Below, one piece after another: positions 13,169 to 64,000 of a stretch of DNA of 64,000 nt; the stretch's first letter is position 1, and each line of letters opens with the position of its first letter. The notes under the pieces were generated by a model that was not told the origin of the DNA, ran no database searches, and saw only the letters and a program-made list of their open reading frames with translations. This DNA is from Podarcis muralis (Eukaryota). The position numbers and the translations under genes are program-made. Where the stretch lies: NCBI RefSeq assembly GCF_964188315.1, contig NC_135656.1:8556001-8620000 (forward strand), read 5' to 3'.

Positions 13169-14443
13169 TTTTTAAGCTCTTCCTAATTTACATCTTACTT
13201 CATTGGGAGAAAGGTTTGAGGATGGTTGGTTCTTTGCTTTTGCGTTTTGAGGTTGTTAAGCTTCTATAAATTGCCCTGTTGCCAAAGCCATACTATTATT
13301 CCCATACTGTATATTGCAAGTGTTAACAGCTCGAACTTCAAATGGCAGGTTGGAGACAAGGCCAAGTTTGGCTTGGATTACAAAATTCCTTGGAGGCTTC
13401 AATAATCTCTCAACTAAATGTCATTTGGAAATTTCCTGAAGCAAGCTCCTTAACCTTAATTTGGTTTCTTGGAGTCAGTCTGGTTAATAGCTCACCAGAT
13501 CAGGATGTTATACTTACCGTATACAAGCCCCTCCAAATACTGTACTAAGATTCCCAATTCCAGAATTCTATATTGTGGTTAAACTGTCCTCAAAGCAAAT
13601 AAGCATTCAGTTGTGTATTAAAATAAAAAGGGAAACGACACATTTCAAATAGCGGTATACCTTTAAAAATGTTACATCTTCTACCTGGTCAATCTTTTGA
13701 CAAAAGTTGATGTTTTGAAAAAATGGGCTCTTCAATAAAGCAATTAGTTACAAAGCTCTCAAAACCAGGAGCTACACTGAAGAACTGTAGTCTACAGACT
13801 GTAAGCTCTAAAATAAAAACAGAAAATTCTCAAACTCTTGTGAAGGTGTAGCTACAGATGCTGTTCCTTATTAGTTGTTCTTTTCAGTCTACAACTGCAG
13901 GTTCTCGGGAGTTGTGTCAATGAATTATCAGACTCCTTTTCAGATTATTTGGAAGAAATCTTTCAATGTTTGTTTCACTTCATATATATAGTAGGTTCAT
14001 TTTAATTGTTCAAAAATCTTAGACAAACTTTGTTTTGTTTTCAAATTCAGACTTTTACAGTATTAAACCACTCCTTAGAACTTTTAAGGTTCAAAGCACA
14101 AACTACTGATTTTGACAAATATCTGTGAGAGAAGCTATTGTTGTTTTTAACGTAACTGTAATAAGAACAGCTTGCAGAGAGGAGGCCGGTAATAATTTAA
14201 TATAAAGATAGCAGTTTCACATTTGTGTTTTTCATTCCCCCGTCCCCCTGCGAGGCACCTGTTTTGGAAAGTTGAACTTAGCAGTTTTGGGGAGAGGAGT
14301 GCAAGTAGCTAGCCATGCCTAGGGCAGAAAATAGCCTGGCACCAGCACAAGGCCAACAAACACAAAAAGGATAAACATCAATGGGGTACACGCCAGCTGG
14401 GTAACCCTAGCTTCTACTGAGAGCTCCTCACCCAAGCCGAGAA

Positions 14444-15411
14444 GGGTGCCACAGGGTTCTGTCTTGGGCCCGGTCTTATTCAACATCTTTATCAACGACT
14501 TGGATGATGGACTCAAGGGCATCCTGATCAAATTTGCAGATGACACCAAACTGGGAGGGGTGGCTAACACCCCAGAGGACAGGATCACACTTCAAAACGA
14601 CCTTGACAGATTAGAGAACTGGGCCAAAACAAACAAGATGAACTTTAACAGGGAGAAATGTAAAGTATTGTACTTGGGCAAAAAAAATGAGAGGCACAAA
14701 TACAAGATGGGTGACACCTGGTTTGAGAGCAGTACATGTGAAAAGGATCTAGGAGTCTTGGTTGACCACAAACTTGACATGAGCCAACAGTGTGTCGCGG
14801 CAGCTAAAAAAGCCAATGCAATTCTGGGCTGCATCAATAGGAGTATAGCATCTAGATCAAGGGAAGTAATAGTGCCACTGTATTCTGCTCTGGTCAGACC
14901 TCACCTGGAGTACTGTGTCCAGTTCTGGGCACCACAGTTCAAGAAGGACACTGACAAACTGGAACGTGTCCAGAGGAGGGCAACCAAAATGGTCAAAGGC
15001 CTGGAAACGATGCCTTATGAGGAACGGCTAAGGGAGTTGGGCATGTTTAGCCTGGAGAAGAGGAGGTTAAGGGGTGATATGATAGCCATGTTCAAAAATA
15101 TAAAAGGATGTCATATAGAGGAGGGAGAAAGGTTGTTTTCTGCTGCTCCAGAGAAGCGGACACGGAGCAATGGATCCAAACTACAAGAAAGAAGATTCCA
15201 CCTAAACATTAGGAAGAACTTCCTGACAGTAAGAGCTGTTCGACAGTGGAATTTGCTGCCAAGGAGTGTGGTGGAGTCTCCTTCTTTGGAGGTCTTTAAG
15301 CAGAGACTTGACAACCATATGTCAGGAGTGCTCTGATGGTGTTTCCTGCTTGGCAGGGGGTTGGACTCGATGGCCCTTGTGGTCTCTTCCAACTCTATGA
15401 TTCTATGATTC
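14444..15411 (+). mobile_element. 5'-truncated CR1 LINE; ORF2 reverse-transcriptase C-terminal part open at 14446-15336
   Basis: PQGSVLGP...FINDLD, KFADDTKLGG, PHLEYCVQFW; 3' (ATTCTATG)n tail; empty paralogous site at about 22721-22730. Confidence 0.95.
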
Positions 15412-15910
15412 CTGTGCTCTTCTGTGCAATGCTAAGTGCAAGATGTTGGCCTTTGTGACCTTGAGGCACATGCCAGAGGCACTGACGACAGAGAAGTAGC
15501 TGGTGAGTAGTTGCTTGACCGAGGGGGAGAGGACAGCAGAACAGGGGGCTCCTTCAGCTCCTCCCAAACACACTCCCACCATCCAATTATACGTTCACGT
15601 TCTAGAGATTGCATCTGCAGGTTCAGGTGACTCAAATCTATGTACAGTATTGACACGCACAGGGGACAGAAAATAGTTTAAAGATTCTGCCCCGCAACTA
15701 GTCGGGCTGAGCAATATATCGACCATATCGCCACTTTGGTTTCATAATATTTGACCTGCCAATAGATTGCGAATCATGAAGTGTGTGAGTGTGTGTTGTA
15801 CAAAAATCACAACGTGGGGAAAACTGTGAAGCCAGCCAATGCCTCTACATAGCTCCATCCTTATTTCAGATATTGCCATATATCAATATATTCCAATATT
15901 TAGCAGTTTG

Positions 15911-16017: not shown

Positions 16018-17292
16018 TTAAAAAATTACCCAAATACTTAAAATAACAACACCACATGCCTCCTCAGTGGATTTCAGAACAAATATGTCTCTCTCTTTTT
16101 AAATTACTCAAACACTGCAATGCAAGGAGTTGCAGTGACAATGCAGTGAGATTCTACTCAGAGTAAGCCTATTGGAATGAATGGGTTTGAATAAGTTGTG
16201 TCCTTTAGTTTTTGCTTTTTATCTGGATAATACCTAATTAGGGATAGGGATTGGTTTGCTTTCTTTCTGTTCTGGTTTTTATTAAGTATTGATTCCACAA
16301 ATTGCACATCAGGATTCATTACATAGTAAGTCCCCCCCCCCCCCCCCGTTCTATTATCAGCTTTCCATCCCATTTCCTAAGATGTTTTTTTTCTTTTCCA
16401 ACCTTAGCTGCAACTTATCTTCCCTCTTTTATATCGTAACTCTAATGCTCTATTAGAATTAAAAGAGGGGGAAACCCAGCCGGATGGGCGGGGTCTAACT
16501 AAATTATTATTATTATTGTCGTTTTATTTTTGTGTGTGTGTTTTTATCTTGTATAAAAGATTAAAACACACAAAAAAACAGAGTTGAAGCAAGAAGGCAT
16601 CTTCAAATATTAAATAAATGCAAGCAGTGAATTGCCAGGACTTGGAAGCCCCCTCCTAGTGATGAATTCACTCTTTCCACCCACCCACCCTTTCAAAAAT
16701 GTGCATGGAATGAATGAGCTGGCATTCAATTCTATTCTTTTAAAAGCATATTTTCTTTTATTATTGGGTCCATTCTGACAAATATTGGGTCCATTCTCTC
16801 ACTTCTGACCCTTCTTGATCCCCTCATTCCTGGGGGTTAGACTAGATGACCCATGGGGTCCCTTCCAACTCTTCCTTTCTACAATTCTCTCGCCTACAAT
16901 TCCGACACCCGCTTCAGGTGAACCTGCACAAACAACGCTGACACCAAACCCTACGTATAGTAAGGTAAAATAGAAAAATCGCCACCCGACCCCACCCCCA
17001 CCCATCTTCCCCCCCCCTCCACCTCTTTCCCCTTTTCTTCCTAATGTCTCAACAAATGAAAATGATTTGTAAAAATGTTACATGGGGGAAAATACATGAA
17101 AGAGAGACATTGCACACTTTTGTAAATCAACAAAATCTTTAATAAATAAATAAATACTATTCATAAAAAAGAGGCCTCCTCACCTGAAGGACATCAAAGC
17201 CCATCTGAAGTCCCAAAACAAAACTATCAGATCCTGATCCACGCAGATCCATGCGTGTATGGAGCGATCTGTGTGGATCTGCATCTGATAGT

Positions 17293-18288
17293 TTACGACT
17301 CCCTGTTGTAGGGAATCACATATATAATTGTATGTTTGGGGACATCAGGTGGGCTTTGATGTCCTTCAGGTGAGCTTTGGGGTGTATGGCTTTCCTCCAT
17401 CTCCTCTTCGCAGGATTCCTCTGGAATGACAAAATCTTCCGCATGGCTTTCCTCCATCTCATCTGTGGATTTCTCTTCAATTACGAGATCCAGCAGAGAA
17501 CCACACTTTCCACAAGTAGTTAGACTCTCGCTTTTTGCTGCGCTTCTTGGGGTAATCACCCTTACGGTCGCTATTTGACATTTATCTGTTGCGGTGGTCT
17601 TGACGCAAAATCTCTCAATCCCAACCAATGCTGCACTCAGCAGCTGGAAACCTGCAGCGATATAGCCTAGATAAATAGAAGGTCCAATATGCTGCTCGCT
17701 GGGAATTTGAGGCAATTCAAAAGCTTCAGGGAAGTCAATTTCCCCATTATGTAAGACGGCAGACATGTTCCATACCACGGAAATCAGGACGAGTATCCCT
17801 GCAACTAAGTTCAGGAAAGCTGCAAGCCTAAAAAAGGTTAACACAAAATTCTTATGTTTTCTGGGCTCGAACACATTGTACAAGGCAAATGAAATCAATC
17901 CCAGGGCCGTTGAATTCATAATGGACGCTAATGCCATTAAGTCCTGTGCAATAAAAATTTCCCTTGGGAGGCTTGGATGTTGCTCATTGAGATCTTCGCA
18001 ATGCCAAAAAGAGTTGCCGTCGTTAGAAGGGTCTTTCCAAAAGCAGACCTGCCAGATTCCAACCCAGATGTTTCCAGAGCCGATTCCCTTGATGTTTTCC
18101 ACACGCCACACTCGCCAGTTGACAACGGCTGTTGAGGCAATGCACATAATCCAGGCCGCAATATCTATCAGGAATGCACACAACTGGAGACCGGACACTA
18201 ATCTCAGCCACCTGACCACCAGGGAGCCTTCTTTCACCTGCATGGGGGGTTTGGAGAGCAGGGGACCAGGGGAGACCTTGGCAGACAT
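17293..18288 (-). CDS. CLDN34: Claudin-34-like gene, copy A (331 aa, single coding exon)
   Basis: Four hydrophobic helices and claudin ECL1 signature W..G[I/L]W-x2-C..C. Motifs WRVW, LPxEIxxAQ and LNxxAG...FPxxFxLP..P..QxIG match my recollection of CLDN34. ATG follows acceptor tttccag|G. Orthology is not tested. Confidence 0.88.
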   Translation of the reverse strand: MSAKVSPGPLLSKPPMQVKEGSLVVRWLRLVSGLQLCAFLIDIAAWIMCIASTAVVNWRVWRVENIKGIGSGNIWVGIWQVCFWKDPSNDGNSFWHCEDLNEQHPSLPREIFIAQDLMALASIMNSTALGLISFALYNVFEPRKHKNFVLTFFRLAAFLNLVAGILVLISVVWNMSAVLHNGEIDFPEAFELPQIPSEQHIGPSIYLGYIAAGFQLLSAALVGIERFCVKTTATDKCQIATVRVITPRSAAKSESLTTCGKCGSLLDLVIEEKSTDEMEESHAEDFVIPEESCEEEMEESHTPQSSPEGHQSPPDVPKHTIIYVIPYNRES

Positions 18289-18467
18289 CCTGGAAACAAA
18301 AGAGAAGACAAGATGCAGTGAGAGAGGGAATAACAAGCATGTCTAGTCATTGAAGGACATCCTCCCTCCTGCATTCTTCCTTCTATGCACAGAAAGAAGC
18401 AGCAAAAGAAAAAGTTCCTGCTCTCTCCCACCCCCTGGTTAGGTAGAGACATCTGATCCACACATAC

Positions 18468-18514
18468 TTTCTTCCAGCAAACTGCCACTGATTTAATATA
18501 CTCTTGCACTGTTC
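18468..18514 (-). other. Putative 47-nt non-coding 5'UTR exon of copy A, with equivalents in B, C and D
   Basis: ttttcacag|GAACAGTG...GGAAGAAA|gtatgt; a further donor CAC|gtaagt at 18665/18664 is conserved in all four copies. Confidence 0.5.
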
Positions 18515-18903
18515 CTGTGAAAATGGCCAGAACCTCAGCAACCTGTTGTGGATGGGAGCTGCTCATGATTCGCTGTTCTGCTATCTGCTGCTGAAGCTAT
18601 CCTTTTCCACCGAGCATAAACACAGCTGATGGCATAGTGAGGAATGTTTAATCCATAAACTTACGTGAAATGCCTTCCTCAGCTAGAGTCTAGCGTGCCA
18701 GGTATAGAGCAGGTATTTGCTAGGTGTTCCTGAGCCTCAAGAAGACTGAGCTGTTGGCCACTGAGCTGACGTTCGCCTGAGCAGCCAGCCAGCCACAGCA
18801 GCAACTGCCCTGCAGAATTCTTAGGTCAGTTACAGTTACAGTTAGAATCCTGACAACACCACAAATCATAACTCCAAGGTACTGGTCATTTGGAACATCA
18901 GGA

Positions 18904-19483
18904 TGTAGCCTTATGAGGCTTTGCCCTCGGGTGGGAAAAATATTGCGCCTGGGAAAGGGAAGTGGGAGTCAACAGACACTCAAGGAATAGTTTCGGAGAA
19001 AAAGGTTTATTTCTACCATCCATGAACTGGTAGAAGGAGCAAGTGTGATAGTCCACAAAAGCATGCACGAGTTCACAATCATGTGCACAAGCATATATAC
19101 CCCTTCCAGATGCCTCCCCCTTCTTCCAGAGTCCTGCCCCTGTTGAGGTTCCTCTGAGCATGAACAGAAAGCTGTCTTGGAACTATTGTGGACTCTTGGC
19201 AGGAAAGGGGGTGAGGGGGTTTTCAGAGTGTTCCCGTTGTTTCATTCTTGTGCTTGGCATGGTTCCCGGAGAGAAAGCAAGTTGCAATGTGGTTCTGAGA
19301 AAGGCCTGAGAAGACAATGGGCTCTGTTCTCTACCTTGTTGCAATCTTTTTAGTTACAGCAAGCGGAATGTTTCTGATGCTTAGCTACTGAGAAAATGAT
19401 TTTGAAAAGCTTTGAGAAGCTTTGAGCCTGTTTGGGGGGTGACTTCGGGCCTAGGTGAGGTCACCTGTCCTCACCTTCCTTCA
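18904..19483 (-). mobile_element. Solo LTR (580 bp) upstream of copy A
   Basis: TG...CA termini and 4-bp TSD AGGA (18900-18903 and 19484-19487). Single AGGA at the empty sites in B, C and D. Minus-strand TATATA at 19094-19099 and AATAAA at 19006-19011. Confidence 0.85.
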
Positions 19484-20303
19484 AGGAAAGTGGAAAATGG
19501 GAGGGAACTCAGTTCCCTTCTTTCCCAATGCAGAGTGTCTATTCCAGGACACTGTGCAGTTGAAACACGTTCTTCCTGAAGTCAGATTCAGAGCAGTTCC
19601 AGCAGTAAAAATGGTGATGTGTGTATCTCAGTACAGATTTGTTTGATGGGTCTGAATGCATTTCATAAAGGATCTCCATGTACAAGAAAGGCCAATAGCA
19701 TGAGCCATAAGAATTTCCTTGGCAAAATTATTGAAGACTCCTTACAAACCTATCCTTCTTCTTCCCCATCCCATCTTGTTTGGACATTATAGTAAAGGAG
19801 AAGATCTTAGCTCTTTTCCTTTGCACTGGGACCACATGGAATTTGTGCCATGGGACCCCATCCCTCACACCAATACAGGCAATACCATTTTCAGAACCTA
19901 GGTGTCCATGATTTAAAAGACACTTCCGTCAAAATATTTGTGTTGCTTTCTTTCTGTTCCTTTCTGTGTCGATGCTCCGAATGTGAGCTGCTCAGCTGCA
20001 TGCAGTGTCCACTGAAGTGTGTGTGTGATTAACATTTGGCCAAGCAATGGGCCTAAATCCATCTATTTCACCTGAAATAACTTTGGGAGCCAGCCTTTAA
20101 AAATCTAAAGGAGATAACAAATTCAGAGGAATTAAAAGCTGTCATCTTTTTGACTATTTTAAACATCTTAGAACATACACAAATGTTAATGTTTGAAGGA
20201 AGGCAGCAAATGGAGCATTGGAGCCATCCATTCATTTCAGGAGTTGTGACCATTGATAAGATGAAGCACTTTCATATCGCACGGCAGTGTGCAGTGCTTT
20301 TAA

Positions 20304-20590
20304 AAAGGTAAATGTAAAGGACCCCTGACAGTTCAGTCCAGTCACGGCTCTGGGGTTGTGCCACTCATTGGCTTTACTGGCCGAGGGAGCTGACATTGGT
20401 CTGCAGACAGTTTTTCCGGGTCATGTGGCCAGCAAGACTAAGCCACTTCTGGAAAAACCAGAGCAGCGCACAGAAACGCCGTTTACCGTCCCTCCAGAGC
20501 GGTACCTATTTATCTACTTGCACTTTGACATGGTTTGGAACTGCTAGGTTGGCAGGAGCTGGGACCGAGCAATGGGAGCTCACTCCATCA
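20304..20590 (-). mobile_element. 5'-truncated Sauria SINE; paralog of 28230-28480
   Basis: SINE body and tail, with flanks shared with the B arm. Confidence 0.85.
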
Positions 20591-21610
20591 AAGACGCAAG
20601 TCCAGTTCTGTATCTGCATGACATCCTCCACACCCAAATGCTCTCCCGTTCTGTTTCCCCCACTTAATCCGGATACACCATCTCCATTGAAAACTCTGCT
20701 CAGTGACACCCATCCAATAGAAAAGTGGTGACCGTCTTCATGCAGATACACTTCCGTGCAGGGGTTTGGCCGACAAGTTCTTCCCGAGTGTGGGGGTGTT
20801 TTCAGGGGCTCTTTGCTTTTCCCTGTCTCCCCTTTCATCCTCACCTGAGGAGATCTTGGCCATTCTCTTGACAGGGACCTCCGTTCTCAGGCCGGATTTC
20901 TGTTTTCCTTCATTCCTCCTTCTCCCCACCTGGTTCACTGAGCAAATAAGAGAGAGGAGGTTTCATGCAAGTCAAGGTGTGCAATGGATCTTCAGGGCAT
21001 TTGGGAGGAAGAAAAGGTTCAGGAACAAGCGACGCAGCCGCCCCCCAAGCGTAAAAACACATTTGGACACATCGCTCATGAGACACACACCCCCCCCCCC
21101 CCCGCGGATATAAATGCAGAACATCCCGTGCTCCTATTAATATAAATAGTGGGGTATTTCATATGATAAGAACAGAGGAAGCTGCCTTAGACGGAGCCAG
21201 ACCAATTTTGGGAAAGTGCTACATGGGCCAGTCCACCAATTGGCTACCAGTGAGAACATAGCAAAACACAAAATGGCTGCCATATGGTGTGGTATGAAAT
21301 AAATTTGCCTGGCTGTGGGGCGTGAAGGCCGCACCCTGCTAGACCCTTTCCACGTGGCCTAGGCCCACATTCGCTAGCCCCACAAAAGAGGCTCCTCATG
21401 AGGCCAGAGGAACGTGGCCTGGCTGTGGGGCATGATTCGAAACATCCAGTCCCAGTCCAGTGCTCTAACCACTAAACCACACTGCCCCCCATTGCAGTCT
21501 ATAACAGCCTGGAGGGCCACAGATGCCCCATATTCTCTGGCTCTGAGATTTCAAAAAGAAAAATGCCCATGACAAAATGTGACATTTTTGGTTCTTTGGA
21601 GACAGTTCTG

Positions 21611-21611
<1 letters not shown>

Positions 21612-21662: not shown

Positions 21663-21669
<7 letters not shown>

Positions 21670-27137: not shown

Positions 27138-27182
<45 letters not shown>

Positions 27183-54257: not shown

Positions 54258-54420
54258 GCTTACCTTGACTTCAGTAAGGCCTTTGAAAAGGTCCCCCATG
54301 ATATTATTGCAAAAAAGCTAGTAAAATGTGGGCTAGACAAAGCTACTGTTAGGTGGATTTGTAATTGGTTGACGGGCTGAACCCAAAGAGTGCTCATCAG
54401 TGGCTCATCTTCATCCTGGA
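54258..54420 (+). mobile_element. CR1 reverse-transcriptase fragment
   Basis: YLDFSKAFEKVPH..KLVKCGLD..VRWI.NWL..QRV. Confidence 0.8.
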
Positions 54421-55116
54421 AAAAAATGATAGTTTATAAATTTTACCCAAAAGGTAGAACTCTGTTATGATGGACTCAAATCCTGTCTTTTCACTGATTT
54501 AAATGTTTGCCATACAGTCTTTCTTGAATCTGGATATTAGTTGACAGTATGTAAGCAGTTTCATATTTTTTCTCCTCTTTAATACTTTGGCGTGTATTTG
54601 ATCTGTTCTTGAAGATGAACCATATCCTGGTACAATATATAGTCATATATTCTCCTATCGGCTCTAATAATAATGTTCCAGTGGTGACATTAACAGTGCA
54701 GGTAAGGACATTTTTGTGATTTTTGTAGTGCAACTCATGATTTTTGTGGTGCAGGGTGTGCCCCTGGCTACGATGTGTGATTTGACGGGGAGTTTGGGGA
54801 GCCCCAATGTGAAAAGAGTGAGGATCCATGAGGATCCGTGCTTCAAAACCACATTTTTGGGCCATGGAGTGGCCAGGAAGCTGTGGGTCCTAGCTTTTGT
54901 GTTGCAGGCTGTGCCCCTGGCTATGACGTGTGATTTGACGGTGATTTAGGGATGGCCCAATGCAAAAAGCATGAGGATCCATGAGGATCCGTGCTTCAAA
55001 ACCACGTTTTTGGGCCACGGTATGACCATGGCCGTGGATCCGAGTTATTTGTGGTGCAGGCTGTGCCGCTGGACATGATGTGTGATTTGATGGTGAGTTT
55101 GGGGTGGCCCAGGGAC

Positions 55117-55117
<1 letters not shown>

Positions 55118-55158
<41 letters not shown>

Positions 55159-56057
55159 CTTTATTCGGCTATAAGCCCACAAGGTAAAACCAATCAATAA
55201 ATAAAATAGCATTTTACATTCTAAAATATCAACTAAAATATTTCAACGCATAATCTCCTTCACGTTACATACAATCTCTAGATGTACCATATTGTGGCCT
55301 TGAATATAACGATGGTGGATAAAGTTTACTAGATTTTTAATAGTCATGCAGCATTCCATGAAGTCTTTTATATGAAAGAACTGAATTCAGGAATCTGGCA
55401 ACCTGTAATGTTCTATAAGAGTCAATGTCCTGAAGTAGATAGGCTAGATGCAATTCAGGTGGTTTAGCAACAGTTTCCAAAATGATTGAACTCAGAATCC
55501 TTGATCGGGGAACAATATATAAAGGACAATTGAACAAGATATGATAAAGGGATTCTATTGATTTGTTGTCACATGCGCATAAAACAGAGGTTTTACCGTT
55601 AGAAAATCTATTGCTCAGCACATTTGAGGGGAATACATTAAATCTGGCTCTAACAAAAGCGAATCTATGCGATGCAACCAATAAGGTAGACAGATATCGA
55701 GGTATCTGGGACATAAATGTAATGCACTGATTTATCGGGGAACATGTACCTCCACCTGTAGTAAGATTTTGTTGCAAATCAACCTCCTCCAATCTTTGAT
55801 GACCTTTTTTGCTGTAATTAGATCTAAGTTTAGTATATCGGAAGGCGACATTCCATAAGACAACAGTTTGGAATGGATTTTTGTTGCCCATGGGCTGGTA
55901 AATTCATCTCTCCAAAGGCACTGAATAAGATGGTAATTGGGCAATTTATGCCAAAGGGACAGCCAGTAATTAAAGGCATGTCTCCACAACAGGATCTCTA
56001 AGGAGGGGGTATTAAGTTCTAAGCGAATAGCCGAGTTGCTTACACAGGAGGGTAGTT
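55118..56057 (-). mobile_element. 5'-truncated non-LTR retrotransposon with CCHC knuckle (RTE-X-like), inserted into a SINE head
   Basis: RFAFVRARF...LCACDNKSIESLYHILFNCPLY; aataaagt(atct)n tail; 11-bp TSD GCCCAGGGACA (55107-55117 and 56058-56068). Confidence 0.82.
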
Positions 56058-56062
56058 GCCCA

Positions 56063-56404
56063 GGGACACAGGTGGCGCTGTGGGTTAAACCACAGAGCCT
56101 AGGACTTGCCGATCAGAAGGTCGGCGGTTCGACTCCCCGCAACGGGGTGAGCCCCCCTTGCTCGGTCCCTGCTTCTGCCAACCTAGCAGTTCGAAAGCAC
56201 GTCAAAGTGCAAGTAGATAAATAGGCGGGAAGGTAAAGGGCATTTCGGTGCGCTGCTCTGGTTTGCCAGAAGCGGCTTAGTCATGCTGGCACATGACCTG
56301 GAAGCTGTACGCCGGCTCCCTCGGCCAATAAAGCGAGATGAGTGCCGCAACCCCAGAGTCGGTCACGACTGGACCTAATGGTCAGGGGTCCCTTTACCTT
56401 TACC
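56063..56404 (+). mobile_element. Full-length Sauria SINE inserted in the satellite
   Basis: 13-bp TSD TTGGGGTGGCCCA (55099-55111 and 56405-56417). Confidence 0.9.
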
Positions 56405-57960
56405 TTGGGGTGGCCCAATGGAAAAAGCGTGAGGGTCCATGAGGATCCGTGCTTCAAAACCACGTTTTGGGGCCATGGTATGACCAGGAAGCCGTGGATC
56501 CGAGTTTTTTGTGGTGCAAGCTATGCCCCTGGGCATGATGTGTGATTTGATGGTGATTTAGGGGTGGCCCAGAGCAAAAAGCGTGAGGATCCGTGAGGAT
56601 CTGTGCTTCAAAACCACGTTTTTGGGCCATGGGGTGGCCAGCAAGCTGTGGGTCCGAGTTTTTGTGTTGCAGCCTGTGCCCCTGGCTATGACGTGTGATT
56701 TGATGGTGATTTAGGGGTGGCCCAATGCAAGAAGCATGAGGATCCAGGAGGATCCGTGCTTCAAAACCACGTTTTTGGGCCATGGTATGACCAGGAAGCC
56801 GTGGATCCGAGTTTTTTGTGGTGCAGGCTGTGCCGCTGGACATGATGTGTGATTTGACGGTGAGTTTGGGGTGGCCCAATGCAAAAAGTGTGAGGATCCA
56901 GGAGGATCCGTGCTTCAAAACCACGTTTTTGGGCTACGGTGTCGCCAGGAAGCTGTGGATTCGTGATTTTTGTGATGGATACTATGCCCATGGCCATGAT
57001 ATTTGATCTGATGGTGACTTTGGCCTGATCTAATGCAAAAATCATGAGGATCCATCAGGATCCGTGTTTTTTAACCATGTTTTTGCTCCATTTCGGCAGC
57101 ACGAAACAGTGGGTGCGTGCTTTTTTTGGTTCTGCTTACAGACTAAAAAGTGGTCTACAGTATCATGGTGTTTTTATTTTGTTTCACTATAAAAATCATA
57201 TGAATTCATGAGGATCTATGCCTCGGATCCATGTTTTTGTGGTGCTGCATACACATTTTTGATAGTCCAGTCTGTAGGCGTGCCTTCCAGGTGTGATTTG
57301 ACACTGCATTTGTTGGAGTTATTTTTTAAAAAGTGGAGGATCCATGAGGATCCGTGTAGATCGGCCTTTAACTCAGACCCAAGTGCACAATTTATCAAGA
57401 ACTGAATCCTACACAGGAGTAGACCCACCGGTTAGGCTTTAGTGGGTCTGCTCTGGAGGAGGCTCTGAAAAACAGGATGACAGCGTGCCTTAAGACCGGC
57501 CAAGATCATGTGAACAGAGTCAATATTTTAATTAATATTGGTTTATTAATTGGTTTATTAATTACAAGCAAACAGCAAAGAACCTGCACAAACAATGCTG
57601 ACACCGAACCCTACGTATAGTAAGTAAAGTAGAAAAATCGCCACCCGACCCCACCCCCACCCATCTTTCCCCCCCTCCAACTCTTTCCCCTTTTCTTCCT
57701 AATGTCTCAACAAATGAAAATGATTTATAAAAATGTTACATAGGGGGGGAAATACATGAGAGACATTGCACACTTTTGTAAATCAACAAAAGCTTAAATA
57801 AATAAATAAATAAATAAATAACTACTAGTCATAAAAAAGCGCCTCCTCACCTGAAGGACATCAAAGCCCACCTGAAGTCCCAAAACAAAACTATCAAAAC
57901 CATGATCCACGCAGATCCATGCGTGTATGGAGCGATCTGCGTTGATCTGGATCTGATAGT

Positions 57961-58959
57961 TTACGACTCCCTGTTGTAGGGTATAACATGTATAATAGTA
58001 TGTTTTGGGACTTCAGGTGGACTTTGATGTCCTTCAGGTGAGCTTTGGGGCGTACGGCTTTCCTCCATCTCTACTGCGCAGGATTCCTCTGGAATTACAA
58101 GATCTTTTGCACATCTTTCCTCCATCTCCACTGTGGAGGATTTCTCTTGAATTACCAGGTCCAGCAGAGAACCACACTTCGAACAAGTAGTAAGACTCTC
58201 GCTTTTCACCGCGCTTCCTGGGGTAATCACCACTACAGTTTCTATTAGAGATGTATCTGTTGTGGTGGTCCTGATGCAACATCTCTCAATCCCAACCAAT
58301 GCTGCACTCAGCAGCTGGAAACCTGCAGCGATATAGCCTAGATAAATAGAAGGTCCAATATGCTGCTCGCTGGGAATTTGAGGCAATTCAAAAGTTTCAG
58401 GGAAGTCAATTTCCCCATTTTGCAAGACAGCAGACATGTTCCATACCACAGAAATCAGGACGAGTATCCCTGCAACTAAGTTCAGGAAAGCTCCAAGCCT
58501 AAAAAAGCGAAAGAGAAAATCCTTATGTTTTCTGGGCTTGAACACATTGTACAAGGCAAATGAAATTAATCCCAGGGCCACTGAATTCATAATTGAAGCT
58601 AGTGCCATTAAATCCTGTGCAATAAAAATTTCCTTCGGGAGGGTTGGATGCTGCTCATCGAGGTCTTCGCAATGCCAAAAAGAGTTTCCGTCGTTAGAAG
58701 GGTCTTTCCAAAAGCAGACATCCCAGATTCCAATCCAGATGTTTCCAGAGCCGATTCCCTCGATGTTTTCCACACTCCACACTCGCCAGTTGACACTGAG
58801 TGTTGACAAAATGCACATTGACAAGGCCAAAATATCCACCAGGCATGCAGATATCTGGAGGCCGGAAACTAAGCTCAGCCATTGGACCACCAGGGAGCCT
58901 TCTTTCACCCACATGGGGGGTTTGGAGAGGAGGGGACCAGGGGAGACATTGGCAGACAT
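57961..58959 (-). CDS. CLDN34: Claudin-34-like gene, copy D (332 aa; 5 aa differences from C)
   Basis: Intact ORF; differences from C counted by eye: F/C, A/S, N/D, T/M, S/R. Confidence 0.88.
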   Translation of the reverse strand: MSANVSPGPLLSKPPMWVKEGSLVVQWLSLVSGLQISACLVDILALSMCILSTLSVNWRVWSVENIEGIGSGNIWIGIWDVCFWKDPSNDGNSFWHCEDLDEQHPTLPKEIFIAQDLMALASIMNSVALGLISFALYNVFKPRKHKDFLFRFFRLGAFLNLVAGILVLISVVWNMSAVLQNGEIDFPETFELPQIPSEQHIGPSIYLGYIAAGFQLLSAALVGIERCCIRTTTTDTSLIETVVVITPGSAVKSESLTTCSKCGSLLDLVIQEKSSTVEMEERCAKDLVIPEESCAVEMEESRTPQSSPEGHQSPPEVPKHTIIHVIPYNRES

Positions 58960-59263
58960 CCTGGAAACAAAAGAGAAGACAAGATGCAGTGAGAGAGGGA
59001 ATAACAAGCATGTCTAGTCATTGAAGGACATCCTCCCTCCTGCATTCTTCCTTCCATGCACAAAAAGAAGCAGCAAAAGAAAAAGTTCCTGCTCTCTCCC
59101 ACCCCCTGGTTAGGTAGAGACATCTGATCCAGAGAAGCCGACACTCATACTTTCTTCCAGCACACTGCTACTGATTTAATCTACTGTTGCATTGTTCCTG
59201 TGAAAATGGCCAGAACCTCAGCAAGCTGTTGTGGATGGGAAGCTGCTCATGATTTTGCTGTTT

Positions 59264-59588
59264 TGTGGGTTAAACCACAGAGCCTAGGACTTGCCGATCA
59301 GAAGGTTGGTGGTTTGAATCCCCGTGACGGGGTGAGCTCCCGTTGCTCGGTCCCTGCTCCTGCCAACCTAGCAGTTTGAAAGCACGTCAAAGTGCAAGTA
59401 GATAAATAGGTACCGCTCCGTTGGGAAGGTAAGCGGCGTTTCTGTGCACTGCTCTGGTTTGCCAGAAGCAGCTTAATAATGACCCAGAAGCTGTATGCCG
59501 GCTCCCTCGGCCAATAAAGCGAGATGAGCACCACAACCCCAGAGTCGGTCACAACTGGACCTAATGGTCGGGGTCCCTTTACCTTTAC
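59264..59588 (+). mobile_element. Sauria SINE; mirror of 45544-45867
   Basis: Same junctions. Confidence 0.88.
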
Positions 59589-62500
59589 TGCACCTATCTT
59601 TTCCCACTGAACATAAACACACCTGATGGCATAGTGAGGAATGTTTAATCCATAAACTTACGTGAAATGCCTTCCTCAGCTAGAGTCTAGCGTGCCAGGA
59701 ACAGAGCAGGTATTTGCTAGGTGCTCCTGAGCCTCAAGAAGACAGAGCGAGCTATTGGCCACTGAGCTGACGTTCGCCTGAGCAGCCGGCCAGCCACAGC
59801 AGCAACTGCTCTGCTGAATTCTTAGGTCAGTTACAGGCCAGTTAGAATCCTGACAACACCACAAATCATAACTCCAAGGTACTGGTCATTTGGAACATCA
59901 GGAAAGTGGAAAATGGGAGGGAACTCAGTTCCTTTCTTTCCCAATGCAGAGTGTCTATTCCAGGACACTGTGCAGTTAAAACGCGTTCTTCCTGAAGTCA
60001 GATTCAGAGCAGTTCCAGCAGTAAAAATGGTGATACAGTATGTGTATCTCAGTACAGATTTGTTTGATGGGTCTGAATGCATTTCATAAAGGATCTCCAT
60101 GTACAAGAAAGGCTAATAGAGTGAGGCCCTGAACCATAAGAATTTCCTTGGCAAAATGATTGAAGACTCCTTACCAACCTATCCTTCTTCTTCCCCATCC
60201 CATCTTGTTTGGACGTTATAGTAAGGGAGAAGATCTTAGCTCTTTTCCTTTGCACTGGGACCACATGGAATTTGTGCCATGCGACCCCATCCCTCACACC
60301 AATATAGGCTATACCATTTTCAGAACCTAGGTGTCCATGATTTAAAATCGCTTTCCTAAAAATATTTGTGTTGCTTTCTTTCTGTTCCTTTTGAAGGACC
60401 AACCACATCTGCTCTTGGGTCCCTGAAGCACAGATTCACACAAAGCGGCAAAACATCCTTGCAGGTTATTAACAGGATTTTATTTGAAGTGCATATGCAG
60501 AACAAAGGTACAGGGCGATAAGTACGCAACCTGCACACCCAGTCAGGGTGCGCCCCCTTGATATAGATTTGCAGAATAGAATACCACCTGATCTCTTGTA
60601 AGCCACCTGATTTCTTGTAAACCGAAAGTTATGGCAACTTCCAATGTCCTTACATGGGCTTGCCCCCCCCACCTTTTCCTTCCTGCACCAGCCTTTCCAC
60701 GCCATGAACCTCGACACGTGTTCAAATGTAAAACATGTGCTTTGTACTAATAGCATTAAGATGGGGCTTTGTCTCCTGCGTTATCCTCCTCCCTTTCAAC
60801 TTGCCTCCTTGTCTTCAGTCTCCCCCCGTCTGGGGCCACAATAACACCCATTCAACCTTGCTCTTATCTTTTACCCCTCTAAGCCAGACATTCCAAAGAG
60901 AGGCCCATTTTACTGTAACATTTAAGCAACAGAAAAAATCCTGTCCCGCTGGCTGGTGTAGAAACCTCCCCCCTTGGGGATAATATAGAACAATATTGTA
61001 ATATGCCCATTCACAAGCAAGGGGCCTAAATCCATCTATTTCACCTGAAATAATTCTGGGAGCCAGCCTTTAAAAATCTAAAGGAGATATCAAATTCAGA
61101 GGAATTAAAAGCTTCTTCCCGAGTGTGGGGATGTTTTCAGGGGCTCTTTGCTTTTCCCTGCCTCCCCTTTCATCCTCACCTGAGGAGATCTTGGCCATTC
61201 TCTTGACAGGGACCTCCCTTCTCAGGCCGGATTTCTGTTTTCCTTCATTCCTCCTTCTCCCCGCCTGGTTCCCTGAGCAAATAAGAGAGAGGAGGTTTCA
61301 TGCAAGTCAAGGTGTGCAATGGATCTTCAGGGCATTTGGGAGGAAGAAAAGGTTCAGGAACAAGCGACGCAGCCGCTCCCCAAGCGGAAAAACACATTTG
61401 GACACATCGCTCATGAGATCTGCCCCCCACCCTTTTAGGATATATATGCAGAACATCCTGTGCTCCTATTAATATACAAAGTGGGGTATTTCATATGATA
61501 AGAACAGAGAAAGCTGTCTTATACGGAGCCAGACCAATTTTGGGAAAGTGCTACATGGGCCAGTCCACCAATTGGCTACCAGTGATAACATAGCAAAACA
61601 CAAAATGGCTGCCATATGGTGAGGTATGAAATAAATTTGCCTGGCTGTGGGGCGTGAAGGCCGCACCCTGCAAGACCCTTTCCACGTGGCCTAGGCCCAG
61701 ACTCGCTAGCCCCACAAAAGAGGCTCCTCATGAGGCCAGAGGAACATGGCCTGGCTGTGGGGCATGATTCGAAACCTCCAGTCCCAGTCCGGTGCTCTAA
61801 CCACTAAACCACACTGCCCCCCCATTGCAGTCTATAACAGCCTGAAGGGCCACAGATGCCCCATATTCTCTGGCTCTGAGATTGTCAACTGTTCCCTCCC
61901 TTTCCCTTGTTGTGCAAAAAGAAAAATGCCCATGAGAAAATGTGACCTTTTTGGTTCTTTGGAGACAGTTCTGCTCCCCCGCCTCTCCAATTAAAGGAGC
62001 CTCATTCCTTTTCCCACCCAACTTCCTCCTGCGCGCAGCTTCAAAATTTCCATAAAGAACTAACTAACTAACCAACCATAATTGGAATGTACGAGATTAA
62101 GGAGATAATTTATTTTTATATAATGAAAATAAATGGGAGGATAAATTAATTGTGCAAGACAAGAATATATAGGATGGCAAAAATCAAAAGAAACAAAGAT
62201 TATGAGTTGGGTTCTTAAAATAACAACACCACATGCCTCCTCAGTGGATTTCAGAACAAATATGTCTCTCTTTTTTTAAATTACCCAAACACTGTAATGC
62301 AAGGAGTTGTAGTGACAATGCAGTGAGATTCTACTCAGAGTATGCCTATTGGAATGAATGGGTTTGAATTAGTTGTGTCCTTTAGTTTTTGCTTTTTATC
62401 TAGATAATACCTAATAAGGGATAGGGATTGGTTTGCTTTCTTTCTGTTCTTGTTTTTATTAAGTATTTTGTTGTGTTGTTGTTGAAATTCCACAAATTGC

Positions 62501-63499
62501 ACATCAGGATTCATTACATAGTAAGTCCCCCCCCCCCCTCTATTATCTGCTTCCCATCCCATTTCCTAGGATTTTTTTTTCTTTTCCACCCTTAGCTGCA
62601 ACTTATCTTCCCTCTTTTATATCGTAACTCTAATGCTCTATTAGAATTAAAAGAGGGGGAAACCCAGCCGGATGGGCAGGGTCTAAATAAATTATTATTA
62701 TTGTCTTATTTATTTATTTGCGTTTTTATCTTGTGTAAAAAATAAAACTCCCAAAAACCCAAAGTTGAAGCAAGAAGGAATTGTCAAATATTACCACCCA
62801 CCCCCTTTCAAAAATGTGCATGGAATGAATGAGCTGGCATTCAAATCTATTCTTTTAAAAGCATATTTTCTATTATTATTGGGTCCATTCTGACAAATAT
62901 TGGGTCCATTCTCTCACTTCTGACCCTTCTTGATTCCATCATTCCTGGGGGTTGGGCTAGATGACCCATGGGGTCCCTTCCAACTCTTCCGTTCTTCGAT
63001 TCTCTCGCCTACAATTCCGACACCCGCTTCAGGTTGTACCAATCATACCAGCAGATAAACCGCATTTTCTCCAGTTGATGGTCTTTTTTTAGGGGGTAGA
63101 AAGGAGCGTGGGTTTGTTTTGGAGGTTTTTGTTAGGAAATCCTGACATCCAGTGGATGGGGAACGCATGACAGCTGACGTTACACGCCCAACATCCACTT
63201 AAAAGCCATATGGTACCTTGAAACGCTTCCCCCAAAAGGATTCTGGGAGCTGTAGTGCTGAGAGCCGTTAGGAGACCCCCTATTACCCTCCCAGAACTCC
63301 CATTCCCAGAGTTCCCTGGGAAGTTGTGGGCATCTCTTTCGAGAGGCAATGGAGTGCGCCTCTGGGGGGTGAAATCAAAAGTTTTCAGCAGGCGCTGGAA
63401 GGAATAACGAAGGAGACGCCTGCGAGAAGCCAAGCTACGGGGAACCAGGCAGACGCCTTCTCGGTGGTGGCGCCTTCTTCATGGTGATCCACTACTGCT

Positions 63500-64000
63500 T
63501 TATTTATTTATTTTTATAATTTTTGTTATATTTTATACAATTGTAACACATACTGCAACAAACATTGCACAACCCAAAAAAAAAAAACCAAAACAAAGAT
63601 TACAAAAGGAAAAAGGAAAAAAAGAAAGAAAAAGATAAAGAATACATCTATAACAAACAACAACAGACAAATAAACCACACAAACAAGCTTAGTTATTTA
63701 AAAATCTAATCTTCTAGACACATTACTTGACTTCCTCTAACCCCTCCCTTCTGAGTTTCTTTGTGTCTGAATGTAACAGTTTTCCAATATCATTATTAAA
63801 GCACAATATTCCAGTTATAATCAAATTTCTTCACTTTTCTTAATGTTCTAAATCCCATTTATTGAAATAAATCCTAATTTAATCCTAGGCCTGTTAGGTA
63901 CTTTCAAGTAACTTCTAATTTTTAATATTACAATATTTATTCAAATGGTCCTTAAATTTCCTCAAATCTTCTTGATATTTCTCTTCTTTCTGGTCGCAGA
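63500..64000 (-). mobile_element. L1-like 3' end (ORF2 terminus, 3'UTR and A-rich tail)
   Basis: Minus frame ..DQKEEKYQEDLRKFKDHLNKYC.. followed by an AT-rich UTR ending in (aaat)n. Confidence 0.55.

What the first reader, a model, noticed from the sequence alone, without database searches (positions are those of the whole stretch)
14280..63500. Palindromic amplicon of four intact claudin-34-like genes (A-, B+, C+, D-) plus two fragments
Seen: about 49 kb of almost wholly duplicated sequence, with a head-to-head pair (A/B) and a tail-to-tail pair (C/D). All four ORFs stay open while neighbouring TEs decay. Established: CLDN34 is a single X-linked gene in human and is multicopy on the mouse X; palindromic amplicons are typical of germline-expressed families. 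Inference: an independent lizard amplification of a claudin-34 lineage, kept under selection and possibly testis- or skin-related.
Basis: partly seen in the sequence, partly recalled or inferred. Interest (0 to 1): 0.85.

Follow-up and report, generated by a model that had tools for sequence, protein, structure and literature searches.

The report
Wall-lizard claudin-34-like gene cluster
This stretch of a common wall lizard chromosome holds four working copies of a claudin-34-like membrane-protein gene, arranged as two inverted pairs; they belong to a family of at least 19 copies that grew within wall lizards, echoing the repeated amplification of CLDN34 on mammalian sex chromosomes.

Summary
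Four intact claudin ORFs lie at A 17296-18288(-), B 29918-31222(+), C 46173-47168(+) and D 57964-58959(-): a head-to-head pair and a tail-to-tail pair. 72% of 14280-63500 is duplicated within the window, so "almost wholly duplicated" is overstated. I found one clear tail fragment, not two, plus an old claudin relic in intron 1 of each copy.

The window is Podarcis muralis OZ076955.1, about 8.556-8.620 Mb. NCBI already calls all four genes. The scan also noted a tandem array of the same family 5 Mb upstream (s1-152641). The family has at least 19 distinct products on three or more chromosomes.

The proteins have a claudin fold, and their best Swiss-Prot match is human CLDN34. They sit in a reptile sister clade with turtle "claudin-34-like" genes, an old tandem paralogue at the SHROOM2-CLDN34 locus.

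Copy C is transcribed and spliced (GT..AG, 43942 to 46172). Between species dN/dS is 0.27-0.38. The C/D pair and its spacer are also present in P. raffonei with two different genes, so P. muralis homogenised its arms by gene conversion. B is a mosaic.

Coding sequence is two to three times more diverged than the flanking non-coding DNA, and I cannot explain this. The tissue of expression is unknown. No paper in the searched library describes this expansion.

The parts
17293..18289 (-). Gene A coding exon: CDS 17296-18288, stop 17293-17295, 331 aa, one 19-aa tail repeat.
   Evidence: ORF and Pfam hits. Splice acceptor immediately before the ATG. It is the positional orthologue of P. lilfordi P0059, because L007 is collinear with window 21550 to 6513.
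20845..20937 (-). Gene A non-coding exon 1. Inferred only; its donor ...CCTCAG|GTGAGG is conserved.
   Evidence: Alignment of the four exon-1 regions, mean column identity 95%. Motif positions. Splicing was not observed for A.
27882..27974 (+). Gene B non-coding exon 1 (inferred).
   Evidence: The NCBI isoform-X1 N-terminal extension (MAKISS...) maps to 27956-28087.
29917..31225 (+). Gene B coding exon: CDS 29918-31222, 435 aa, B-type. It has an expanded acidic repeat and an alternative C-terminus.
   Evidence: The same C-terminal frame (...KGYLKDIKGHLMSPNI.LYM) occurs in B-type proteins of P. muralis, P. raffonei and P. lilfordi. B-type 31-mers are held by RNA runs. B is a mosaic of an A-like 5' half and a C-like 3' half.
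30783..31153 (+). Coding tandem repeat in the tail of B: 57 bp x 6.5 copies, 97% matches. It encodes the 19-aa unit CASDLVIPEESC(T/A)VEMEES.
   Evidence: Tandem Repeats Finder. Protein tails.
43850..43942 (+). Gene C non-coding exon 1. The 3' end was observed in RNA; the 5' end is not fixed. It carries an upstream ATG (MAKISS) at 43924 in strong context.
   Evidence: RNA contigs of runs X1 and X2 join 43939/43942 to 46169/46172 with GT..AG ends. An X2 contig covers 43861-43942. uORF analysis.
43943..46171 (+). Intron 1 of gene C, 2229 nt. It contains a claudin relic and a high-copy expressed repeat at 45455-46045.
   Evidence: Apart from that repeat, RNA depth in the intron is zero in most bins and about 2 or less in the rest.
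46172..47171 (+). Gene C coding exon: CDS 46173-47168, 332 aa. The 3'UTR continues, with poly(A) signals about 302-329 nt after the stop.
   Evidence: RNA contigs cover 46169-47276 and are C-like at 6 of 8 C/D diagnostic sites.
57961..58960 (-). Gene D coding exon: CDS 57964-58959, 332 aa, 98.5% identical to C.
   Evidence: Positional orthologue of P. raffonei P0001.
61180..61272 (-). Gene D non-coding exon 1 (inferred).
23876..24157 (-). Claudin tail fragment covering aa 222-331 and closest to A. It lies 2.9 kb upstream of A exon 1 on the same strand.
   Evidence: tblastn E=1e-35. The P. raffonei gene model P0076 joins such a fragment to exon 1.
44977..45271 (+). Old claudin-like relic in intron 1 of C. 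Equivalent relics: A 19484-19729(-), B 29186-29356(+), D 59873-60040(-).
   Evidence: tblastn, 30-35% identity to aa ~106-205. The best blastx matches are squamate clade II proteins, with Rhineura P0023 at 47-50%.
43347..48294 (+). C arm of the tail-to-tail inverted repeat. Its inner end is a 154-bp satellite at 47942-48296.
   Evidence: Self-BLAST. TRF.
56714..61775 (-). D arm of the tail-to-tail inverted repeat, with the 154-bp satellite at 56405-57085.
48295..56713 (.). Spacer between the C and D arms, with LINE remnants. It is orthologous to the spacer in P. raffonei and partly to that in P. lilfordi.
   Evidence: L001 12075-14289 matches 55111-52897 at 97.4%. L006 12485-15739 matches 48789-54429. 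LINE endonuclease ORF.
16981..21550 (-). A arm of the head-to-head inverted pair.
   Evidence: Self-BLAST, 90-96% to 31565-27273.
27273..31565 (+). B arm of the head-to-head inverted pair. The spacer 21551-27272 holds the tail fragment.

Best explanation
The window holds one cluster of a large, Podarcis-grown family of functional claudin-34-like genes.

Gene structure. Each copy is a two-exon gene: a short non-coding exon 1, an intron of about 2-2.5 kb, and a single coding exon. It sits in a duplicon of about 5-7 kb that carries its own upstream region. Because the copies keep the intron, they arose by DNA-level segmental duplication, in both orientations, and not by retroposition.

Origin of the lineage. 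It is the reptile-specific tandem paralogue (here called clade II) of CLDN34, which arose beside SHROOM2. Turtles keep both genes. Among the squamate proteins the searches returned, only clade II was found, and Elgaria has a clade-I-like relic. In lacertids, copies moved away from that locus and multiplied.

Mode of evolution. The family evolves by birth and death plus frequent gene conversion:
- The C/D inverted pair predates the split of P. muralis and P. raffonei, yet the P. muralis arms were homogenised afterwards.
- B is a mosaic of A-like and C-like halves.
- The non-coding flanks of all four copies are much more alike than the coding exons.

The proteins. They are four-helix claudin-fold membrane proteins. 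They have a long, disordered, acidic, cysteine-bearing cytoplasmic tail whose 19-aa repeat number varies from 1 to about 8. They lack the classic C-terminal YV PDZ-binding motif.

What is shown: the fold, family placement, arrangement, splicing of copy C, purifying selection, conversion and mosaicism. What is inferred: that all four copies are expressed; that they act as cell-cell contact or membrane-organising proteins; and any link to the germline, which rests only on analogy with mammalian CLDN34 amplicons.
For: - ORFs and Pfam hits.
- AF2 model with 4 TM helices and a 5-strand extracellular sheet, pLDDT above 88 in most blocks of the core.
- Best Swiss-Prot structural hit is human CLDN34: E=1e-13, 28% identity, against 15-23% for other claudins.
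- Named homologues.
- Tree: lacertids monophyletic at 100/100; clade II = turtle L + squamates at 100/99.
- Tandem order of clade I then clade II in Platysternon.
- Elgaria: Shroom-type gene, then a clade-I-like relic, then clade II. Human SHROOM2-CLDN34 adjacency is documented in PMC13634048.
- All four window proteins are in NCBI gene calls on a 126.8-Mb record; the four 90% clusters hold 32, 13, 17 and 12 members.
- Other clusters at about 3.5 and 13.2 Mb.
- Spliced RNA contigs from two studies, carrying C-type SNPs.
- dN/dS 0.27-0.38 between species.
- Stop-codon and indel arithmetic.
- P. raffonei collinearity and arm comparison.
- Mosaic test, p<=0.001.
- Flank K 0.038-0.057 against CDS dS 0.18-0.24 and dN 0.09-0.13.
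Against: - Only copy C was shown to be spliced. A, B and D are inferred from conserved splice sites and, for B-type, from 31-mer presence in RNA runs.
- The observed C transcript carries a strong out-of-frame upstream ATG that overlaps the main start. This could limit translation.
- No protein-level evidence exists.
- Two RNA data sets (X22, X20) show almost no reads on the CDS.
- Young paralogue pairs have dN/dS 0.66-1.15, not different from neutrality. Some copies may be drifting.
- The clade I/II split relies on a fish root and long branches. The AU test rejects the alternative only marginally (p=0.0455).
- The arrangement was not checked with long reads.
Confidence: 0.85

Rival explanations
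1. Germline (testis or ovary) ampliconic family. As with CLDN34 on the bat Y, carnivore Y and mouse X, the copies would be expressed in germ or supporting cells. Copy number and inverted arms with gene conversion would then be maintained by reproductive selection or genetic conflict.
For: - CLDN34 has 52 testis-specific Y copies in Rhinolophus sinicus (PMC13715679).
- CLDN34Y (formerly TETY2) is multicopy in carnivores (PMC6280758).
- Cldn34c4 knock-down lowers testis weight and sperm number in mouse (PMC10943590).
- Here: inverted pairs, arm-to-arm conversion, expression restricted to some RNA libraries, and several upstream ATGs.
Against: - The tissue of the positive RNA runs is unknown.
- The cluster lies on a 127-Mb chromosome that is very probably an autosome.
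- Arms are 97% identical, not above 99.9%.
- Most of the family is in tandem arrays, not palindromes.
- The lizard genes are a paralogous clade to the mammalian gene.
Confidence: 0.35
2. Somatic epithelial barrier family (skin, gut, kidney or glands). The paralogues would diversify tight-junction-like contacts in a lizard-specific epithelium.
For: - Claudin fold with the W-G(L/I)W-C-C signature conserved.
- Fish and chicken papers use claudin-34 as an intestinal barrier marker (titles).
- Purifying selection between species.
Against: - No C-terminal YV PDZ-binding motif.
- The extracellular loops are the least variable part, and the variation sits in TM1 and the cytoplasmic tail.
- Bulk and single-cell RNA sets X22 and X20 show almost no reads.
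Confidence: 0.25
3. The copies are decaying. They would be young duplicates that have simply not yet acquired stop codons, and the RNA signal would be read-through or noise.
For: - Young pairs have dN/dS 0.66-1.15, not significantly below 1.
- An out-of-frame uORF overlaps the start.
- Overall paralogue dN/dS is about 0.5.
Against: - About 195 substitutions with no stop (P about 5e-4), and 10-20 frame-breaking indels per pair in 2.8 kb of flank against one in the CDS.
- Orthologue-level dN/dS 0.27-0.38, p down to 2e-5.
- All 14 CDS read from three species are intact.
- A precise GT..AG splice seen in two independent studies, with a largely empty intron.
Confidence: 0.05
4. Assembly artefact: the inverted pairs would come from mis-joined haplotigs or collapsed and expanded repeats.
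For: The region is repeat-rich. No long reads were inspected here.
Against: - An independent P. raffonei assembly has the same tail-to-tail pair with the same spacer.
- P. lilfordi shares A and its left flank, and C with its spacer.
- Copies differ by 3-13%, too much for haplotypes.
- Whole-genome runs of other individuals hold 64-72% of the C and B 31-mers.
Confidence: 0.03

Closest known systems
Mammalian CLDN34 amplicons: Rhinolophus sinicus Y (52 copies), carnivore CLDN34Y/TETY2, mouse X Cldn34 genes (Cldn34c4, Cldn34d appear)
   Same: - Same gene family in the broad sense.
- The whole protein is encoded in one exon here (mammalian gene structure was not checked).
- Lineage-specific multiplication to tens of copies.
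- Divergence between copies.
- Expression limited to some tissues.
   Different: - The mammalian amplicons are sex-linked and testis-specific. The lizard copies lie on a 127-Mb, very probably autosomal chromosome and on at least two others, and their tissue is unknown.
- The lizard genes are a paralogous clade (II) with a long acidic repeat tail of 100-200 aa that the bear, bird and alligator clade I CLDN34 proteins of about 214-228 aa lack.
Turtle 'claudin-34-like' (339 aa) and single-copy squamate 'claudin-34' (Elgaria, Varanus, Anolis, Pogona and others)
   Same: - Same clade II (100/99 support).
- Same position downstream of clade I and Shroom.
- Squamate members share the CxxCGS tail motif.
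   Different: - One copy was returned for each of the other squamate species. Rhineura has 3 and Zootoca 2, against at least 19 products in P. muralis.
- The 19-aa acidic repeat occurs only in the Podarcis proteins.
- In Zootoca the copy lies between MFS_5, HAD and separase genes, not next to Shroom.
Sex-chromosome palindromes with arm-to-arm gene conversion (human Y P1-P8, X-linked cancer-testis palindromes; own knowledge)
   Same: - Inverted arms of 4-5 kb, each carrying a gene, around a unique spacer.
- Arms within a species are more alike than positional orthologues between species, which implies conversion.
   Different: - Arms are short, and only 97% (C/D) or 90-96% (A/B) identical.
- The A/B arms carry different, old gene types.
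- In P. lilfordi the second gene is in direct orientation.
Gene families whose coding exons diverge faster than their introns and flanks (snake-venom PLA2 isozymes, some immune receptor families; own knowledge)
   Same: Total CDS divergence is 10-14%, against 4-6% in 1.6 kb of aligned upstream non-coding DNA.
   Different: Synonymous sites are elevated too (dS 0.18-0.24) and overall dN/dS is below 1. Protection of coding 'types' from homogenisation, or mosaic conversion, fits at least as well as classic positive selection.

Membership tests
Claudin / PMP22-EMP-MP20 superfamily | Profile match above the curated cut-off (PF13903, PF00822) | tested here: met
   All four copies score 40-47 bits against a cut-off of 29.1, and 28.5-35 against 26.7.
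Claudin / PMP22-EMP-MP20 superfamily | Four transmembrane helices with a beta-sheet built from ECL1 and ECL2 | tested here: met
   AF2 model: helices 20-54, 109-139, 146-179, 203-236; strands 59-62, 69-76, 80-85, 94-99, 198-201. PDB claudin-4, -3, -9 and -19 hit by sequence at E=1e-5 to 1e-2.
Claudin / PMP22-EMP-MP20 superfamily | ECL1 signature W-G(L/I)W-C-C | tested here: met
   W58, W61, W79, C82 and C97 are invariant, and G77 and I78 are present in at least 90%, across 48 sequences from fish to mammal.
Classic claudins | C-terminal YV PDZ-binding motif | tested here: not met
   C-termini are ...NRES (A, C, D) and ...PLYM (B).
CLDN34 (orthologues of human CLDN34) | Closer to CLDN34 than to any other claudin | tested here: met
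   The top Foldseek Swiss-Prot hit is human CLDN34 H7C241: 28% identity, TM by hit 0.81, rmsd 2.1. Other claudins reach 23% or less. Nearly all named sequence hits that carry a claudin name are claudin-34 or claudin-34-like; three entries are auto-named claudin-3-, -4- or -7-like. No tree with other claudins as outgroup was built.
CLDN34 (orthologues of human CLDN34) | Groups with the mammal, bird and crocodile CLDN34 clade | tested here: not met
   The genes fall in sister clade II with turtle claudin-34-like (100/99). Forcing turtle L into the bird/crocodile/turtle clade costs 27.5 lnL, AU p=0.0455.
CLDN34 (orthologues of human CLDN34) | Position next to SHROOM2 | tested here: not met
   Met for the single Elgaria clade II gene, which lies 7.9 kb downstream of a PDZ-ASD1-ASD2 gene; the human order is given in PMC13634048. 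No Shroom exon is in this window, and the Zootoca copy lies between MFS_5, HAD and separase genes.
CLDN34 (orthologues of human CLDN34) | Whole protein encoded in one exon | tested here: met
   Uninterrupted ORFs, with an acceptor directly before the ATG. The observed splice joins a non-coding exon to it.
Palindromic ampliconic gene families | Inverted arms carrying the gene around a unique spacer | tested here: met
   C/D arms of about 5 kb around an 8.4-kb spacer; A/B arms of about 4.5 kb around a 5.7-kb spacer.
Palindromic ampliconic gene families | Near-identity of the arms (above 99%) kept by ongoing conversion | tested here: not met
   Arm identity is 97.2% (C/D) and 90-96% (A/B). One conversion event after the P. 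raffonei split is inferred.
Palindromic ampliconic gene families | Germline-restricted expression | not testable with these tools
   Run and sample names are coded and carry no tissue. Expression is present in X1 and X2 and almost absent in X22 and X20.

The most novel reading that the evidence does not exclude
CLDN34-type tetraspanins would be a recurrent target of copy-number and sequence arms races in amniote reproduction, whatever the sex-chromosome system. In a ZW lizard the same family (its tandem paralogue) would have become an autosomal, partly palindromic, gene-converting amplicon. Its coding 'types' would be actively kept different (TM1 and the acidic Cys-repeat tail) while the surrounding DNA is homogenised. 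This would be a signature of diversifying or type-preserving selection on a germline membrane protein.
Probability: 0.25. Interest if true: 0.75.

Novelty: new member of a known kind. Interest (0 to 1): 0.55.

Why it matters
CLDN34 has no established function, yet it has been amplified independently on the mouse X, the carnivore Y and a bat Y, and linked to testis. A further independent expansion, in a reptile, off the ancestral locus and very probably autosomal, shows that the tendency to amplify belongs to the gene family and not to mammalian sex chromosomes. It also offers a second system in which to ask what these proteins do.

The locus is a compact natural example of three processes side by side: concerted evolution of flanks, preservation of distinct coding types, and variation in a coding tandem repeat. 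Three sequenced Podarcis species make it tractable.

The work also clarifies annotation. The 'claudin-34' of the squamates sampled here falls in the turtle 'claudin-34-like' clade. By the tree and gene order (the AU test rejects the alternative only marginally), that clade is an old tandem sister of bird and mammal CLDN34.

Tried and rejected
- Retrocopy origin: rejected. Every copy keeps intron 1 and the non-coding exon 1.
- Second coding fragment: not found. Sensitive tblastn gives one tail fragment, four intron relics and short antisense tail copies.
- Shroom exons in the window: tblastx and blastn with the Elgaria locus found none.
- Anchoring the window to the Zootoca locus: only a 210-bp match at 10055-10263, too little to decide orthology.
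- Look-ups of P0018 and P0060 returned nothing.
- Rfam scan of the whole window: no family.
- The Pfam NPH3 and PspAA hits of B fall on the acidic repeat and lie below cut-off, so I treat them as spurious.
- The 193-aa antisense ORF over the 5' half of A, C and D: I treat it as a by-product of codon usage. It is absent in B and has no support.
- Classic ECL-driven diversifying selection: not supported. The ECLs have dN/dS about 0.3, and ECL2 plus TM4 are nearly invariant.
- Tissue of expression: could not be obtained, because run metadata are coded.


Full report
**Observation.** From the first ATG they are:
- A: 17296-18288(-), 331 aa
- B: 29918-31222(+), 435 aa
- C: 46173-47168(+), 332 aa
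- D: 57964-58959(-), 332 aa

All four pass the Pfam cut-offs for Claudin_2 and PMP22_Claudin. Self-BLAST shows two inverted arrangements:
- C/D, tail-to-tail: 43347-47350 against 61775-57774 at 97.2%, continuing to 48294 against 56714 at 93%.
- A/B, head-to-head: 17427-21550 against 30782-27273 at 90-96%.

Intra-window duplicates cover 72% of 14280-63500, against 5% of the first 14 kb, so "almost wholly duplicated" overstates it. Unique stretches include an 8-kb LINE-bearing spacer between C and D.

I find one clear coding fragment, at 23876-24157(-), matching aa 222-331. There is also an old claudin-like relic in intron 1 of every copy. The neighbouring TE ORFs are truncated.

**Where it is and what is already annotated.** Exact-sequence look-up shows that all four proteins are NCBI gene products on a 126,814,402-bp record. 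B maps to Podarcis muralis GCA_964188315.1 OZ076955.1 at 8,585,918. The window is therefore about 8,556,001-8,620,000.

The four 90%-identity clusters that contain the window proteins hold 32, 13, 17 and 12 members from P. muralis, P. raffonei and P. lilfordi. I count at least 19 distinct products in the new P. muralis annotation, on records of 126.8, 83.7 and 43.0 Mb.

Other clusters lie on the same chromosome:
- At about 3.5 Mb there is a direct tandem array with 7-kb spacing and dS of 0.004-0.02 between copies. The scan noted this array as s1-152641.
- At about 13.2 Mb.

**Family and fold.** The AF2 model of C has four helices (20-54, 109-139, 146-179, 203-236) and a five-strand extracellular sheet, with high confidence in the core. 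The tail, 237-332, is disordered.

The best Swiss-Prot structural match is human claudin-34 (E=1e-13, 28% identity, TM by hit 0.81). All other claudins reach 15-23% identity. In the ECL1 signature, W, W, C and C are invariant and G and I near-invariant across 48 sequences from fish to mammal. The classic C-terminal YV is absent.

**Phylogeny and synteny.** In a 66-sequence ML tree rooted on fish:
- Bear, birds, alligator and the turtle claudin-34 sequences of 212-274 aa form clade I.
- Turtle "claudin-34-like" (325-339 aa) plus every squamate "claudin-34" sampled form clade II (100/99).
- Forcing the turtle long form into clade I costs 27.5 lnL, with AU p=0.0455, which is only marginal.

Gene order agrees with the tree. 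In Platysternon a clade I gene lies 9.3 kb upstream of the clade II gene on the same strand. In Elgaria the order is a PDZ-ASD1-ASD2 (Shroom-type) gene, then a clade-I-like relic (52% to Pelodiscus CLDN34 over 102 aa), then the clade II gene. Human TBL1X-GPR143-SHROOM2-CLDN34 are contiguous (PMC13634048).

So clade II is an old tandem sister of CLDN34 at the ancestral locus. All 33 lacertid sequences form one clade (100/100). The three Rhineura genes branch just outside it, and the two Zootoca genes pair with each other within it.

The window holds no Shroom exon. The Zootoca gene P0008 lies between MFS_5, HAD and separase genes, 8.7 Mb from a chromosome end. Lacertid copies have therefore left the ancestral neighbourhood.

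**Gene anatomy and expression.** A polypyrimidine tract and CAG acceptor abut the ATG of each copy. Logan contigs of RNA runs from two studies (X1, 2025; X2, 2017) cover 46169-47276. They carry a GT..AG joint from 43939/43942 to 46169/46172. Intron depth is zero in most bins and about 2 or less in the rest, apart from a high-copy repeat at 45455-46045.

Those contigs are C-like at 6 of 8 sites that distinguish C from D. Raw RNA reads of two other data sets (X22, X20) barely touch the CDS, so expression is restricted to some samples. The tissue labels are hidden.

Exon 1 and its donor are nearly invariant in all four copies. Exon 1 carries an ATG (MAKISS) in strong context. With the observed splice this gives a 24-codon uORF that overlaps the main start. 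NCBI isoform X1 (375 aa) instead reads on to a donor 132 nt further downstream.

B-type 31-mers are also held by RNA runs. Splicing of A, B and D was not examined.

**History of the arrangement.** The P. raffonei locus L001 is collinear, in reverse, with window 60359 to 44846, including the spacer at 97%. The tail-to-tail pair therefore predates the split of the two species.

In P. raffonei the two genes differ: P0001 is D-type and P0007 is a mosaic type. Their arms are 96-99% alike in the intron but only 86-90% in most of the CDS. In P. muralis, C and D are 98.5% alike throughout, and both resemble the P. raffonei D-side gene (92-94%) more than the C-side gene (87-90%). The simplest reading is arm-to-arm conversion (D onto C) in the P. 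muralis lineage.

In P. lilfordi:
- A and its left flank are collinear with the window.
- A C-type gene with the same spacer is present.
- The next gene is in direct orientation.

A maximum chi-square test shows that B is a mosaic. Its 5' half is nearer A (39 against 16 informative sites) and its 3' half nearer C (31 against 6), with a breakpoint near nt 539 and permutation p<=0.001.

**Selection.**

| Comparison | dN/dS | p (against neutrality) |
|---|---|---|
| A vs P. lilfordi orthologue | 0.38 | 0.002 |
| C and D vs P. raffonei or P. lilfordi counterparts | 0.27-0.28 | 2e-5 to 1e-4 |
| C vs D | 0.21 | 0.008 |
| Young pairs | 0.66-1.15 | not significant |

All 14 CDS read from three species are intact.

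The four copies differ by about 195 substitutions, and 3.9% of random substitutions would create a stop, so the chance of none is about 5e-4. The 2.8 kb upstream carries 10-20 frame-breaking short indels per pair among A, B and C/D (5 between C and D). The CDS carries one, and that one is the B-type terminal frameshift. This frameshift is shared by B-type proteins of all three species, so it is old and defines the subfamily.

**An unexplained pattern.** Across 1,638 four-way aligned upstream non-coding sites, A, B and C differ by K=0.038-0.057. The CDS has dS 0.18-0.24 and dN 0.09-0.13. For the recently homogenised C/D pair, K=0.031, dS=0.031 and dN=0.007.

Divergence is patchy. TM1 (dN up to 0.26, dN/dS about 0.9-1.4) and the tail are most different. 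ECL2 and TM4 are almost identical, with dS near 0.

Because synonymous sites are elevated too, I favour one reading: the flanks are homogenised by conversion, while distinct coding types persist and exchange segments. Positive selection on TM1 and the tail is not excluded.

**Tail.** The 19-aa unit CASDLVIPEESC(T/A)VEMEES (57 bp) occurs:
- once in A, C and D;
- 6.5 times in B;
- one to about eight times across the family.

A CxxCGS motif about 23 residues after TM4 is conserved in all squamate clade II proteins examined. It is absent from the turtle, alligator and bear proteins examined.

**Comparison and novelty.** CLDN34 is multicopy and testis-linked on mammalian sex chromosomes:
- 52 Y copies in a bat (PMC13715679).
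- CLDN34Y in carnivores (PMC6280758).
- Mouse Cldn34c4, expressed in adult testis, whose knock-down lowers testis weight and sperm number (PMC10943590).

Full-text searches found no paper linking claudin-34 to lizards or Podarcis. The lizard expansion exists in automatic annotation but appears undescribed in the searched library. It is a new, independent member of a known kind of event.

**Limits.**
- No long reads were checked.
- Only copy C was laid against RNA.
- The tissue of expression is unknown.
- NG86 estimates ignore recombination and transition bias.
- The tree has no non-CLDN34 outgroup.
- Chromosome identity (probably autosome 3) is inferred only from size and accession order.

Noticed in passing
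window 44977-45271(+), 29186-29356(+), 19484-19729(-), 59873-60040(-): Each copy carries, inside intron 1 and in gene orientation, a decayed claudin-like stretch covering aa ~106-205. It resembles squamate clade II proteins, best Rhineura P0023. This suggests an older upstream tandem copy died and that its exon 1 and promoter may now serve the downstream coding exon.
   Followed up: partly
L009 (Elgaria) about 5477-5902: Between the Shroom-type gene and the annotated claudin-34 lies a 141-aa ORF covering TM3-ECL2-TM4. It is 52% identical to turtle and bird clade I CLDN34. This looks like a remnant of the true CLDN34 orthologue in a squamate.
   Followed up: partly
window 43924-43942 joined to 46172 onward (the same site exists in A, B and D): An upstream ATG (MAKISS) in strong context in exon 1. 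With the observed splice it opens a 24-codon uORF overlapping the claudin start. With a donor 132 nt downstream it gives the 44-aa N-terminal extension of NCBI isoform X1.
   Followed up: partly
window 47093-47130 vs 47246-47285 (also downstream of A, B and D: 17177-17251, 31319-31360, 57844-57891): The last codons are repeated in antisense in the 3'UTR, forming an inverted repeat across the stop codon. The scan already noted this as s1-175908 and s1-152540. The RNA contig of X1 ends at 47276, inside it.
   Followed up: no
window 47942-48296 and 56405-57085: A 154-bp satellite (2.3 and 4.4 copies) forms the inner ends of the C and D arms, next to the spacer.
   Followed up: no
window 45455-46045 and 48213-48400: A high-copy repeat with very high depth in all four RNA data sets and many loose ends at 45867 and 48295. 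It is an expressed interspersed element inside intron 1 and at the arm boundary. No Rfam family matches it.
   Followed up: no
window 17765-18346(+), 46115-46696(-), 58436-59017(+): A 193-aa ORF antisense to the 5' half of the CDS stays open in A, C and D but not in B. It is probably a by-product of codon usage.
   Followed up: no
window 10600-11750: A GC-rich stretch (53% GC across 10001-12000) with long overlapping ORFs on both strands and no Pfam match. It is conserved in P. lilfordi (L007 14857-16564, 92%). It may be a CpG island or the first exon of a neighbouring gene.
   Followed up: no
window 23232-23471: A 100-bp tandem repeat (2.4 copies, 96% matches) sits beside the tail fragment in the A/B spacer. 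A 185-bp repeat x3 lies at 26290-26847.
   Followed up: no
L002/L003 (P. muralis OZ076955.1, 3.48-3.52 Mb): A direct tandem array of 368-aa and 330-aa claudin-34-like genes about 7 kb apart, with dS of 0.004-0.02 between copies. This shows very recent amplification elsewhere on the same chromosome.
   Followed up: partly
L010 (Zootoca vivipara OY735903.1, 114.87 Mb): The Zootoca claudin-34-like gene lies between an MFS_5 transporter gene, a HAD-hydrolase gene and a separase gene. It is therefore away from the Shroom neighbourhood seen in Elgaria.
   Followed up: partly
window 46434 and 46445: RNA contigs from another individual are C-like overall but carry the D letters at these two sites. This could be a short C/D conversion tract segregating in the population.
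   Followed up: no
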